Shown here: piece after piece, positions 24,969 through 35,984 of the stretch
Numbering within the stretch: the stretch's first letter is position 1
Layout of the letters: every line of letters starts with the position of its first letter
Assembly: GCF_001194135.2 (NCBI RefSeq)
Contig: NC_069005.1
Location: 19,851,887-19,915,886, forward strand
Origin: Octopus bimaculoides
Lineage: Eukaryota
Length of the DNA stretch: 64,000 nt
Direction: 5' to 3'
Notes under the pieces: generated by a model
What the model saw: only the letters and a program-made list of their open reading frames with translations
The model's database searches: none
Told to the model about the DNA's origin: nothing
Program-made: the position numbers and the translations under genes

Positions 24969-27900
24969 CCACCCCCACCTCCTCCACTTGACCTCCCCCC
25001 ACCTCCGAACCTCCCCCGCCTCTCAGGGCCCCACCCACCAACTCGTAGTGCTTCATTGAATGTCAAAACAGGTCAAATGTCAAATAATTTGAATAGCTCC
25101 CCATTTCGGCAGTCTGGCCGTGCGAGGTCTTCAACGAAAGGAAGCCACACAAGTAGCATCTTGAGGTCTGGCTTTTTGGATACGTCAGATCTGGAAGACT
25201 GTCGGACACCTGAGATCAGTGAACTGAATTTCTCTGTAGGACAAGGTACACCTGTTGCATCAGAAAGCGGATCAAGAAGCATTCAACACCATGCCCCCTC
25301 AGTGGATTCAAACAGGTTTGCATTGACTTCAAAACCAACAAGCAAAATCGATGAGCCCATCCCAGTGTTACTGAAATGCCAGACTTGGTGCAACAAAATA
25401 CCTGATGCTGGAGACAAAAAGGCATCCGTTCCTGAACCAAAAATGAGTGAAGAATTACGAAACATTGAATCATTTGAGTCAGCAATGTTGGACTGGTTTC
25501 AGACACTTACACACGCAAATGACACAGATGACTTAAAATCAGAAACGTCAGTGAGTTCTGTTGGTTCCCGCAAGTCTGAATATCGGCTCCGGTCAATCAT
25601 ATCCAACCGTTTCCAAACGTCAGACCAAATTGAGAATGTTCTCACTGATTTACTGGCTGTCTCTGATCAATATGCACAGCTCACTGATTCAGAGTCTATA
25701 GGCTCAGCAGCTTTGGATCCTCTAAAGTCAAGATATCGAGCTTTCGGTCACAAGCCTGGTTCAGCTTACCGGTCTCAAATGTTCCGAAGAACTTCTGGAT
25801 ATCGAAGTGGGGATATGTCTGAAACAGAGTCCGATTCTGAGAGACCTGCACATCCAAGTAGTTACAAGACCGTCTTATCTGAACTTCAGGCAGTTTTGAG
25901 GAAAAGAAAAGTCACACTTAAAACACCATCTGTGGAATCTGGTTTGGGTTCCTCTGAAAATTCTATGAAAGCTACCTCTGAGACCATGTCACCACCTATT
26001 TCCAGGCAGAGCAAAGCTTCACCCCCTCCTGCTCCACCTCCTAAACCTCAGATGGCAAAGGTACATGAAGCTAAGCCAGATGCAGTCCAAACAGCCAGTA
26101 AAACCCAACGACGGCCATTAGTGAATTCAGGTGATTTTCACGTTCTGTTGGGTGAATTAAGTACAGCATGGTCTAAGCGTCTCAGAAGAATACGGAAAGC
26201 TCAGATGGTCTCACAGAGAGGAGTGGAAAGTTCGCTGTATGCCAACTTCCAAGGGTTCCGTGTCCCTGAAACACTGGCCAGCGAAACATCATCAAAATAT
26301 AAGAACTTTGAAGGGGTTCAGACTCCAGCTGAATCAATAGCTGAAGAAGATGCTGAAGATCTGAAGAATTATGAGAGTTTCGAAGCAAGAAAATCTAAAT
26401 TTATGGCTAACAGCTCGTCACGTCAATACGAAAGTGATCAAGAATTGTCAAGACCTTCGTTTGGCAGAATTCGGGGTCCTGGCATGAATAATGACATGGT
26501 ACGGCCCTCAAGAGTATCCGTCAGAAAACAAGCATTCCAGTCTCCAAATGAAAAGCAGTCAAGGAGGAAACCTGATCTGGAGACGTGCTCACTCCATTCT
26601 TTTGGTGTCCGGCCTTTTCCCAAAATGCAGAACAATGTTGGAACTGCTGTTGTCAGTGATAATGAATTTGATGATCGAAATCAGAGTTTTCGGATGCATC
26701 GGTCACGGCATAACCCTGAACAACATCGTATATGGCAAAACATTGAGTATATTCAGGTTAATTCGCGACAGACTCCTTCAAGACATGGTTCTGAGCAAAG
26801 TCTTTCACAGCTAAAGACAGAATCACAGGGTCGGCCACGACGACGTGAACGTACTCCACAAATTGTTGAACAACAGTCTTCCCAGCAGCCTCTTCAACAT
26901 TCTCAGTCAAGAGAGGATGTCAGTTCCTCTTCCCTTCACCATTCTAGGGATATTTCATCCAAACCAAAAGTGGATGAAAAGATCCCCTCTCGAGAAGATA
27001 GCAAGGAACAACCAAAACATGAATCTTCTACAGTATTAACATTGTCCAATAGCAACCAAGGTCCAAAAGTGAAAGCAGTCAGTAAAAAGACAGACACTAA
27101 ATCTGAATTTCATAAAAGAATTGAGCAAATTTCAGTTGATGATTTCAATAGATCTGCTGACCCAGAAGTAAGGAAATTCTTGGTAGCTGGTGTAACAGAT
27201 GTATCAAAGCAGCTACAGTCTACAATTTCTGAGGCAACAGAGAAACCAGCACCACCAAGTATGAAGCTATCTTCACCAGTTAATCAGAACATCGAACCTA
27301 CCAAGGCACCAAGCACTGATCATATGAATGTTGGGGATGAAAAGGAGATTATTTTAGAAAGGCTACAGAAAATTGGAGATAATAAATTTGTCAGCAAAGA
27401 AGAACTCCCAGATTTGCCAATGGATATTGTTAAAGCCAGTGCCATGATAGTAAAACCATTAGTTACGTCCAATCTGAACAAATTAATTAGTGGTAGAAAG
27501 GAAGAAGAGAAACCAAAAAGCTTGGAAAAGTCTGAAGCAGTTCTTAATTTCTCTGATACAGTTGTGCAAGAGCAAACGGTTCTGTCAGAATATGAAGACA
27601 ATGTCATTTTGGATGGCATTGAAGACAGATTAGTTCCAGAAAAGAAACCAGATACTTCTGATGGATTTGATATGGATAACAGCAGAATCTTGTCTGAAAT
27701 AAATGTTGACCAAAAGTTATCCCTGGAAGAACCTAATGAAAGCGAGTCTGTTATCAGTGAGGCCAAAGTTGAAATTACATCTACAAAAACTACAGCCGTT
27801 ACAGTGCTTCAAAGTTCAGTCTCTGAAGAACACAAAGCAAGTGATGCTGTATTAAAGAGTGAAGGTATTACTGAAGATCAACAAGCAACAGATGGTTTGG

Positions 27901-35984: not shown

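What the first reader, a model, noticed from the sequence alone, without database searches (positions are those of the whole stretch)
24969..35984. 11-kb giant exon inside a paxillin locus: candidate ~400 kDa LIM-less giant paxillin isoform
Seen: at least 11,016 bp without a stop, free of the SINEs and microsatellites that fill the flanks. It is on the same strand as, and lies between, two phase-2 candidate exons that can splice in frame to the LD4 exon. It starts in poly-Pro like the 47066 exon and ends in a stop plus three AATAAA. I found no strong phase-2 donor near its end (the good GTATGT donor near 35727 is phase 1). Known: paxillin is normally a ~60-70 kDa LD/LIM adaptor whose C-terminal LIM domains target focal adhesions; giant exons in ankyrins create spacer-like neuronal isoforms. 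Inference: use as an alternative last exon would fuse the paxillin N-terminus to a huge acidic disordered rod and drop LD4, LD5 and all LIMs.
Basis: partly seen in the sequence, partly recalled or inferred. Interest (0 to 1): 0.9.

Follow-up and report, generated by a model that had tools for sequence, protein, structure and literature searches.

The report
Giant coding exon inside octopus paxillin
An 11-kb protein-coding exon under selection sits inside an intron of the octopus paxillin gene and ends in its own stop and poly(A) signals, but whether it is spliced onto paxillin to make a giant LIM-less isoform or is a separate nested gene cannot be decided, because its 5' end lies in an assembly gap.

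Summary
Bases 24969-35984 (+) are one stop-free frame of 3,671 codons (406 kDa, pI 4.5). The chance of that is about 1e-107, and the stretch is nearly free of the microsatellites and dispersed repeats that fill the flanks.

It lies in the roughly 33-kb intron between two paxillin exons on the same strand: cassette exon A (20965-21117, present in O. sinensis paxillin X4/X6) and the LD4 exon (53809-54004).

It is real coding sequence. Its last ~330 residues, including the final ...KFWK-stop, are 38-46% identical to an equally open ORF in another cephalopod lineage. dN/dS between two close lineages there is 0.13-0.23.

It is a terminal exon: the stop is conserved, four poly(A) signals follow it, and no usable phase-2 donor lies near its end. 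The ORF has no Pfam domain, no LD motif, no LIM domain and no relative outside cephalopods.

The link to paxillin is unproven. The ORF runs into the 795-N gap with no credible start codon. No deposited paxillin model seen here contains it, and the only model of it stands alone and is cut off at the gap.

I rate an alternative last exon of paxillin at 0.45 and a nested gene at 0.4.

The parts
20965..21117 (+). Paxillin cassette exon A (51 codons, enters and leaves in phase 2, ends ...AAMFQ + AG|gtcaga). It is the nearest upstream paxillin donor that could feed the giant exon.
   Evidence: Present in O. sinensis paxillin X6 and X4 and skipped in X7. Boundaries read. Donor score 6.9 bits.
24174..24968 (.). 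Assembly gap (795 N) that hides the 5' boundary of the giant exon. Its left edge is a (GT)n microsatellite and its right edge is in-frame CCN codons.
24969..35984 (+). Giant open reading frame: 3,671 codons plus TAA, 406 kDa, pI 4.53, rich in Ser, Glu, Leu and Thr.
   Evidence: no Pfam family
24969..25076 (+). Pro-rich leader of 36 codons upstream of the first ATG (Met37 at 25077). It is open only in the ORF frame, its CCN codons vary at the third base, and Met37 has a poor initiation context (C at -3, T at +4). Coding sequence therefore probably continues into the gap.
25049..25049 (+). Only visible AG acceptor that is both phase-2 compatible and has a reasonable pyrimidine tract (...cccacccaccaactcgtag|T, 71% pyrimidine). 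It is a fallback if the real acceptor is not in the gap.
25077..27200 (+). Basic, Ser-rich N-terminal region (net charge positive over residues 251-750) that keeps more CpG (o/e 0.5-0.7 over 25001-27000) than the acidic middle. No Pfam domain.
28416..28906 (+). 23.4 tandem copies of a 21-nt unit encoding KPEES(L/V)(V/L/T), in frame.
30067..30556 (+). In-frame 30/90/120-nt repeats encoding (P)QLEPSS...QSQLEALRMALAQMEPSS units.
33429..33479 (+). Polybasic stretch KKKRRRKAKKNKNNKDK within the acidic region. It looks like a nuclear localisation signal, but that is inference only.
34839..34910 (+). Pro-rich pair PPPVPPPFR ... EPPPIPSRE (PxxPxR, a class II SH3-ligand-type motif). It is conserved as PPPLPRSLR ... 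EPPQPPARE in the other lineage.
34995..35981 (+). Conserved C-terminal module (last ~330 aa). It contains the islands KRFRDLKHFSRISN-TYNEV, SSDSGI, SDSAV, YGRI-K, SLDYH, QD-G-C-SNF, DDN-S--S-VSFL and ESIYEDV--Y-SSE. It is predicted to be disordered except for helices over KRFRDL...DFSQLC.
   Evidence: P0006 E=2e-47, 46% identity; 38% identity over 82% of the 420-aa query; alignment; AF2 mean pLDDT 42; dN/dS 0.13 in the sister lineages
35850..35891 (+). ESIYEDVSLYSSSE, invariant between lineages over ESIYEDV. It resembles a Src-family kinase / SH2-type Tyr motif, which is an inference from the motif consensus.
35919..35984 (+). Polybasic-aromatic tail KKSKKLSSKLKKFGSKLKFWK followed by TAA. SKLKKFGSKL...KFWK-stop is conserved.
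36007..36122 (+). Cluster of poly(A) signals (AATAAA at 36007, 36047 and 36091; ATTAAA at 36117) in A-rich sequence 23-135 nt after the stop.
47066..48010 (+). Exon B: a 315-codon Pro/Gln/Ser-rich candidate cassette exon, phase 2 on both sides. It is conserved at 30-33% identity in other cephalopods, and it is absent from the O. sinensis isoforms seen here.
53809..54004 (+). Paxillin LD4 exon (...ATRELDELMASLSEFR), entered in phase 2 and left in phase 0.

Best explanation
The stretch is a giant 3'-terminal coding exon that has been kept in cephalopods, very likely coleoids. It lies in the alternatively spliced LD3-LD4 interval of the paxillin gene, on the coding strand.

Most likely mechanism: it is used as an alternative last exon.
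- A phase-2 paxillin donor (exon A at 21117, or the LD3 exon or the 76-aa exon upstream of the window) splices to an acceptor hidden in the 0.8-kb gap.
- Translation runs through at least 3,671 codons to the TAA at 35982.
- The transcript is cleaved at the AATAAA cluster at 36007-36122.

The product would be a protein of about 440 kDa made of four parts:
- the paxillin N-terminus (LD1-LD3 and the Pro-rich site) without LD4, LD5 or the four LIM domains;
- a basic Ser-rich segment;
- a strongly acidic, repeat-rich disordered spacer of about 2,500 residues;
- a conserved C-terminal module of linear motifs: a PxxPxR SH3-type ligand, a short helical segment, a Src/SH2-type IYEDV tyrosine motif, and a polybasic-aromatic tail of the kind that binds acidic membranes or calmodulin.

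Shown: the exon is coding, under selection, terminal, and sits inside paxillin on the sense strand. Inferred: the splice to paxillin, and all motif functions.
For: - The ORF is real and non-random, with in-frame repeat periods only.
- The locus is paxillin, and the ORF lies between exon A and the LD4 exon on the same strand.
- All neighbouring alternative exons are phase-2 symmetric, so any of their donors could feed one phase-2 acceptor.
- There is no credible start codon. The 36 codons before Met37 are open only in the ORF frame, are CCN codons with varied third bases, and Met37 has C at -3 and T at +4.
- No CpG-rich or coding-looking sequence lies between exon A and the gap: CpG o/e is 0.11-0.31 and the ORF list shows only junk.
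- The exon is terminal. The stop and the final KFWK are conserved, four poly(A) signals follow, and no phase-2 donor lies near the end.
- Selection: 38-46% identity over the last ~330 aa to another lineage, dN/dS 0.23 overall and 0.13 in the C-terminal module, and 6 of 9 polymorphisms synonymous.
- Precedents: vertebrate paxillin gains large disordered alternative exons with SH3-ligand motifs in the muscle isoform ePxn (PMC11216089). In XIRP2, inclusion of a giant exon gives a LIM-less long isoform and skipping it gives a LIM-containing short one (PMC10259482).
Against: - No junction between a paxillin exon and the ORF was observed, and the acceptor is not visible.
- The paxillin models seen here (O. 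sinensis X4 791 aa, X6 715 aa, X7 664 aa; O. vulgaris 875 aa, which is the longest product of that gene) do not contain the ORF.
- The only deposited model of the ORF (P0005) is a stand-alone protein starting at Met37.
- The ORF has no LD motif, no LIM domain and no similarity to paxillin.
- The poly-Pro likeness to exon B is not significant at the DNA level.
- In the one other genomic contig available, no homologue lies within 10 kb upstream of exon B. In octopus the distance is 11 kb, so this is uninformative.
- Whether the homologous contigs are RNA or DNA could not be told, so there is no expression evidence at all.
Confidence: 0.45

Rival explanations
1. Nested independent gene. The ORF is the giant terminal (or only) coding exon of a separate cephalopod-specific gene that happens to lie in a paxillin intron on the same strand. 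It would have its own promoter and start codon in the gap or just upstream. Its product would be a disordered acidic protein of about 400 kDa with the same C-terminal motif module, unrelated to paxillin.
For: - The deposited model P0005 is stand-alone.
- All paxillin models seen lack the ORF.
- There is no sequence relation to paxillin and no homologue outside cephalopods.
- Octopus paxillin is a gene of about 324 kb with huge introns, which leaves room for nested genes.
- Giant terminal exons preceded by small 5' exons are the usual build of stand-alone giant-protein genes such as AHNAK (own knowledge).
Against: - Met37, the model's start, has a poor context and is preceded by 36 in-frame coding-like codons. 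The stand-alone model is therefore truncated by the gap and is not evidence of independence.
- No promoter-like CpG enrichment or coding exon is visible between exon A and the gap.
- The O. vulgaris annotation lists no nested gene anywhere in the 324-kb paxillin range. Gene predictors rarely call same-strand nested genes, so this is weak.
- On the sense strand, a functional acceptor plus poly(A) site would be seen by paxillin pre-mRNA anyway, so the two readings do not exclude each other.
Confidence: 0.4
2. Internal giant cassette exon of the ankyrin type. The ORF is spliced on both sides, so the giant insert sits inside a paxillin that keeps LD4, LD5 and the LIM domains.
For: - Neighbouring exons A and B are symmetric phase-2 cassettes.
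- Vertebrate ePxn keeps its LIM domains.
- Strong donors exist inside the ORF, for example AAG|GTGAGT at 29407.
Against: - All strong donors are phase 1 or 0. The phase-2 donors are weak and lie at 25166, 25316 and 31610, far from the end.
- The last ~330 residues, right up to ...KFWK and the stop, are the best conserved part. That makes no sense if this part were spliced out or read through.
- The 35725 donor falls in a conserved block, and its GT is not conserved in the other lineage.
Confidence: 0.05
3. Non-functional relic or mobile-element ORF: an unexpressed or decaying open frame, or a transposon or viral polyprotein.
For: No Pfam domain and no homologue outside cephalopods. No expression data are available here.
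Against: - 3,671 codons without a stop in AT-rich DNA (P about 1e-107).
- A conserved C-terminus and stop in another lineage.
- dN/dS 0.13-0.23.
- No transposase, reverse-transcriptase or capsid domains, and no repeated copies in the window.
Confidence: 0.05

Closest known systems
Extended paxillin (ePxn), the Rbfox1-promoted muscle isoform of vertebrate paxillin (PMC11216089)
   Same: It is the same gene family, and large alternative exons add a disordered, Pro-rich, motif-bearing region to paxillin. In the window, exons A and B each have a TGCATG 17-25 nt after their donor, as expected for Rbfox-enhanced exons.
   Different: ePxn's extra exons are internal cassettes. The protein only doubles in size (116 kDa), keeps all LIM domains and still goes to focal adhesions. 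The octopus ORF is about ten times larger, ends in its own stop and would remove LD4, LD5 and the LIM domains. Exon B, not the giant ORF, is the better positional counterpart of the ePxn exons. Homology to ePxn exon 7 was not tested.
XIRP2 long versus short isoforms (PMC10259482)
   Same: One gene makes either a giant-exon isoform without a LIM domain or a short isoform that skips the giant exon and carries the LIM domain. The two localise differently on actin structures.
   Different: In XIRP2 the giant exon encodes folded or functional Xin repeats, and the long isoform reads the downstream exon in another frame. Here the giant exon is disordered and ends with its own stop and poly(A) signals. 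There is no sequence similarity.
Giant ankyrins (480-kDa ankyrin-G, 440-kDa ankyrin-B), made by inclusion of a giant exon
   Same: A single exon of about 7-10 kb adds an extended, largely unstructured acidic or Ser-rich spacer to an adaptor protein, giving a cell-type-specific giant isoform (own knowledge).
   Different: The ankyrin giant exons are internal, and the downstream domains are kept. Here the exon is terminal.
LIM-less short isoforms of PDZ-LIM proteins (ZASP/Cypher short forms, ENH short forms), made by alternative last exons (own knowledge, not checked here)
   Same: Use of an alternative 3' end removes the C-terminal LIM domains from a cytoskeletal adaptor while keeping its N-terminal interaction module.
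   Different: Those isoforms are shorter than the LIM-containing forms. This one would be about six times longer. It is also a different gene family.

Membership tests
Paxillin gene product (isoform of paxillin) | The sequence lies inside the paxillin transcription unit on the coding strand | tested here: met
   Exon A (20965-21117) and the LD4 exon (53809-54004) flank it on the + strand and match O. sinensis paxillin X6/X4 at 98-99%.
Paxillin gene product (isoform of paxillin) | A splice junction joins a paxillin exon to the ORF in frame | not testable with these tools
   The 5' boundary lies in the 795-N gap. No transcript data were reachable. Exact look-ups of 17 Met-to-stop sub-sequences found nothing.
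Paxillin gene product (isoform of paxillin) | LD motifs and/or LIM domains within the sequence itself | tested here: not met
   No LD-motif or LIM pattern in the ORF. No Pfam family even at E<=1. No tblastn similarity to paxillin X6 beyond noise.
Alternative last exon / intronic polyadenylation isoform | In-frame stop followed by poly(A) signals inside a host-gene intron, on the sense strand | tested here: met
   TAA at 35982-35984; AATAAA at 36007, 36047 and 36091; ATTAAA at 36117. The stop is conserved in a second lineage.
Alternative last exon / intronic polyadenylation isoform | No downstream donor that would continue the host reading frame | tested here: met
   No phase-2 donor above 4 bits after 31610; the 35725 GTATGT is phase 1.
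Alternative last exon / intronic polyadenylation isoform | A 3' splice site in the phase of the upstream host donors | tested here: inconclusive
   The real boundary is probably in the gap. The one visible phase-2 AG with a fair pyrimidine tract is at 25048|25049.
Independent nested gene | Own start codon in a good context with a non-coding leader | tested here: inconclusive
   The first ATG (25077) has C at -3 and T at +4 and follows 36 in-frame CCN-rich codons. A start inside the gap cannot be excluded.
Independent nested gene | Own promoter | tested here: inconclusive
   No CpG enrichment at 21001-24000 (o/e 0.11-0.31), but the gap is unseen and many animal promoters are CpG-poor.
Giant internal cassette exon (ankyrin type) | A frame-preserving donor at the 3' end, so that downstream domains are kept | tested here: not met
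Protein-coding sequence under purifying selection | Conservation between lineages with dN/dS well below 1 | tested here: met
   46% identity over 327 aa, E=2e-47. dN/dS 0.23 overall and 0.13 in the last 330 codons between L004 and L015.

The most novel reading that the evidence does not exclude
Coleoid cephalopods make a paxillin isoform of about 440 kDa. The LD1-LD3 adaptor head is fused, through a disordered acidic spacer of about 2,500 residues, to a conserved C-terminal signalling and membrane-binding module (SH3 ligand, IYEDV tyrosine motif, polybasic-aromatic tail). This module takes the place of the LIM domains that normally target paxillin to adhesions. That would be a new way of anchoring a focal-adhesion adaptor, and the first natural LIM-less paxillin.
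Probability: 0.4. Interest if true: 0.7.

Novelty: new variant of a known kind. Interest (0 to 1): 0.55.

Why it matters
Paxillin reaches focal adhesions through its LIM domains, chiefly LIM3 (PMC2133378, listed). It recruits FAK, vinculin and others through its LD motifs. A natural isoform that keeps LD1-LD3 but swaps LD4, LD5 and the LIM domains for a giant acidic tether with a polybasic tail would uncouple partner binding from LIM-based, tension-sensitive targeting. It would show, outside vertebrates and arthropods, the same giant-exon strategy used by ankyrins and XIRP2.

If it is instead a nested gene, it is still a conserved, uncharacterised cephalopod-specific protein of about 400 kDa. 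Its sense-strand poly(A) site inside paxillin would have to be bypassed whenever normal paxillin is made.

Either way the question is cheap to settle with existing long-read assemblies and cephalopod RNA-seq.

Tried and rejected
- A whole-ORF homology search timed out.
- A word-indexed search with residues 26-675 found nothing. That index also failed to return the ORF's own deposited model (P0005), so its negatives are weak.
- The exhaustive representative search of the last 1,200 aa found only P0005 and one 366-aa cluster.
- Pfam and PDB sequences gave nothing.
- AlphaFold2 on the conserved 420 aa gave mean pLDDT 42, so no fold search was run.
- The exon-duplication idea (giant-exon start derived from exon-B start) is rejected. 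The protein score of 80 is driven by poly-Pro, and the DNA alignment is no better than codon shuffles.
- Synteny in a second species could not be tested. The 131-kb contig with the exon-B homologue could be read only to 10 kb upstream, and no homologue lies there.
- Fetching the O. sinensis or O. vulgaris locus to see the gap sequence failed. X6 and X4 are not the indexed (longest) product. The O. vulgaris gene spans 324 kb, so no DNA was returned.
- Exact look-ups of 17 Met-to-stop sub-sequences, meant to find octopus read-assembly contigs with a poly(A) end, found none.
- Contigs L002-L012 and L015 break at homopolymers and at a PKQPAP repeat and show no poly(A) tail. Their library type (RNA or DNA) and species could not be established.
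- Using the 35725 donor was rejected: it is phase 1 and its GT is not conserved.
- The AG acceptors at 25026|25027 and 25071|25072 are phase 1. Joined to exon A, the first of them gives an immediate stop (read).
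Full report
**Observation**

The window is cephalopod DNA. The two paxillin exons in it match Octopus sinensis paxillin at 98-99%. The ORF's own product is deposited in UniRef and EukProt, so it is probably O. bimaculoides (inference).

From 24969, the first base after a 795-N gap, to the TAA at 35982-35984 there is one open frame of 3,671 codons. 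With the ORF's own base composition a stop is expected every ~15 codons, so the chance of none is about 1e-107. The other five frames have 99-422 stops. Codon-position composition is strongly periodic. All internal tandem repeats have periods that are multiples of three. Microsatellites fall from 2.4 per kb in the flanks to 0.18 per kb inside, and dispersed repeats are absent.

**Context**

The LD4 signature ATRELDELMASLSEFR is encoded at 53809-54004.

Exon A (20965-21117) is a real paxillin cassette exon. O. sinensis isoforms X6 and X4 contain it between LD3 and LD4, and X7 skips it. X4 also has a 76-aa exon that lies outside the window.

Exon B (47066-48010, 315 codons) has a good acceptor and a donor nearly identical to exon A's (...CCAGAG|gt). 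It is phase 2 on both sides. It is 30-33% identical to genomic ORFs from two other cephalopod assemblies. It is not in the three O. sinensis isoforms I could see.

The giant ORF therefore sits in the ~33-kb intron between exon A and the LD4 exon, on the coding strand. This is the part of paxillin where lineage-specific disordered cassette exons accumulate. The O. vulgaris paxillin-type gene spans about 324 kb.

**Is it a real gene product?**

Yes. The exhaustive search of 1.8 billion cluster representatives with the last 1,200 residues returned two proteins:
- P0005 is the ORF itself, called from Met37 (3,635 aa).
- P0006 is a 366-aa protein, 46% identical over the last 327 residues (E=2e-47).

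P0006 and its variants occur on ~2-kb read-assembly contigs from more than 20 sequencing runs. In those contigs the frame stays open to the 5' end (572 and 578 codons), where assembly breaks in a PKQPAP repeat. The frame ends at the same ...SKLKKFGSKL...KFWK-stop.

Conservation is in islands: a PxxPxR pair, KRFRDLKHFSRISN-TYNEV, SSDSGI, SDSAV, YGRI-K, SLDYH, QD-G-C-SNF, DDN-S--S-VSFL, ESIYEDV and the basic tail.

Between two slightly diverged lineages (L004 and L015), dN/dS is 0.23 overall, 0.13 in the last 330 codons and 0.58 further upstream. Their 3' UTRs are 89% identical. Within one lineage, 6 of 9 polymorphisms are synonymous.

In the octopus ORF, CpG is retained at both ends (25001-27000 and 35001-36000) and depleted in the acidic middle. 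This fits constrained ends and a fast-evolving spacer.

**What kind of protein?**

It has no Pfam family and no PDB relative. Nothing outside cephalopods turned up for the parts searched. Residues ~676-2471 were never used as a separate query.

Composition is 406 kDa, pI 4.5, 14% Ser and 13% Glu. After the first 250 residues (net -6) comes a basic Ser-rich stretch (about residues 251-750), then about 2,500 residues with net charge of -16 to -47 per 250 residues. The acidic part includes 23 KPEESLV heptads and LEALRMALAQME-type repeats.

AlphaFold2 on the conserved 420 residues gives mean pLDDT 42, with only a low-confidence helical stretch over KRFRDL...DFSQLC.

The conserved parts look like short linear motifs: a class II SH3 ligand, a Src/SH2-type IYEDV, and a MARCKS-like polybasic-aromatic tail. 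These assignments are inference from motif consensus.

**Terminal exon**

The best conserved residues run right up to the conserved stop. Four poly(A) signals follow within 135 nt. No phase-2 donor of any quality lies in the last 4 kb. The internal-cassette reading is therefore rejected.

**The open question: paxillin isoform or nested gene?**

For a paxillin alternative last exon:
- The strand and the position fit.
- All neighbouring paxillin donors are phase 2.
- The ORF has no credible start. The 36 codons before Met37 are open only in this frame and are CCN codons varying at the third base, and Met37 has C at -3 and T at +4. The deposited Met37 model is therefore simply truncated by the gap.
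- Nothing promoter-like or coding-like lies between exon A and the gap.
- A sense-strand acceptor plus poly(A) site would be seen by paxillin pre-mRNA in any case.

Against it:
- No junction was observed.
- The paxillin models I could see omit the ORF. At least one longer O. sinensis product exists that I could not retrieve.
- The ORF has no paxillin-like sequence.
- The poly-Pro likeness to exon B does not exceed chance at the DNA level.
- Synteny in a second lineage could not be tested.

I put the alternative-last-exon reading at 0.45 and the nested gene at 0.40. The two are not mutually exclusive.

**Comparison with known systems**

- Vertebrate extended paxillin (ePxn) shows that paxillin does acquire large, disordered alternative exons bearing SH3 ligands under Rbfox1 control. 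These exons are internal and the LIM domains are kept.
- XIRP2 shows the closest logic: including the giant exon gives a LIM-less long isoform, and skipping it gives a LIM-containing short isoform.
- Giant ankyrins share the giant disordered exon but not its terminal position.
- No paper in the searched library links paxillin with a giant exon.

**Verdict**

The headline claim, a LIM-less giant paxillin, remains a good but unproven hypothesis that existing public data could settle quickly.

Noticed in passing
window 21143-21148, 48028-48033, 54081 and 54145 (+): TGCATG (Rbfox-type) motifs lie 25 nt after the exon A donor, 17 nt after the exon B donor and 76-140 nt after the LD4 exon donor. None occurs in the 13 kb from 24033 to 37024, which contains the giant ORF. 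The window has 33 on the + strand against about 12 expected, but many sit in TG/CA microsatellites. This parallels the Rbfox1 control of vertebrate ePxn.
   Followed up: partly
window 47066-48010 (+): Exon B is a conserved 315-codon phase-2 cassette exon (Pro/Gln/Ser-rich, containing SEQSHIYKKIE and FESSVSEQQ islands shared with other cephalopods). It is absent from O. sinensis paxillin X4, X6 and X7, and it is a likely counterpart of the vertebrate ePxn exons.
   Followed up: partly
window 25166 and 25316 (+): Two weak phase-2 donors (GAG|GTCTGG, CAG|GTTTGC) lie near the start of the giant ORF. With an acceptor in the gap they would give a small in-frame cassette exon joining to exon B or LD4. 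The giant exon could then be the read-through (composite terminal exon) form of a small cassette.
   Followed up: no
window 56239-56706 (-): Mariner/Tc1-type transposase remnant (Pfam Transposase_1, E=1e-11) broken by stops, in the intron downstream of the LD4 exon.
   Followed up: yes
window 55376-55693 (-): A 106-codon open frame with a YIGET...R...EH pattern reminiscent of a GIY-YIG endonuclease (Penelope-like element). No Pfam hit at E<=0.01.
   Followed up: partly
window 6107-6421 (-), 9663-9881 (+), 11244-11525 (-), 60249-60539 (-), 63511-63792 (-): Repeated short element whose translation reads ...LPKVPCSGTEPGTM....
   Followed up: no
window 27956-28969 (-) and 29765-30874 (-): Long antisense open frames (338 and 370 codons) opposite the repeat arrays of the giant ORF. 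They are best explained as by-products of the repetitive codon composition, not as genes.
   Followed up: no
P0015 (O. vulgaris CAI9740639.1, 'Zasp-like isoform X2'): This O. vulgaris paxillin model is mislabelled as Zasp-like, and its C-terminus is chimeric. It leaves LIM4 at ...HPKHFT and continues into about 200 unrelated residues with a zinc-knuckle-like CYVYGSKLHLKINCP, probably a retroelement fragment.
   Followed up: no
The search for homologous proteins: The word-indexed search did not return P0005, although P0005 is 100% identical to both queries and is in the collection. Negatives from that tool for this ORF are therefore unreliable.
   Followed up: partly
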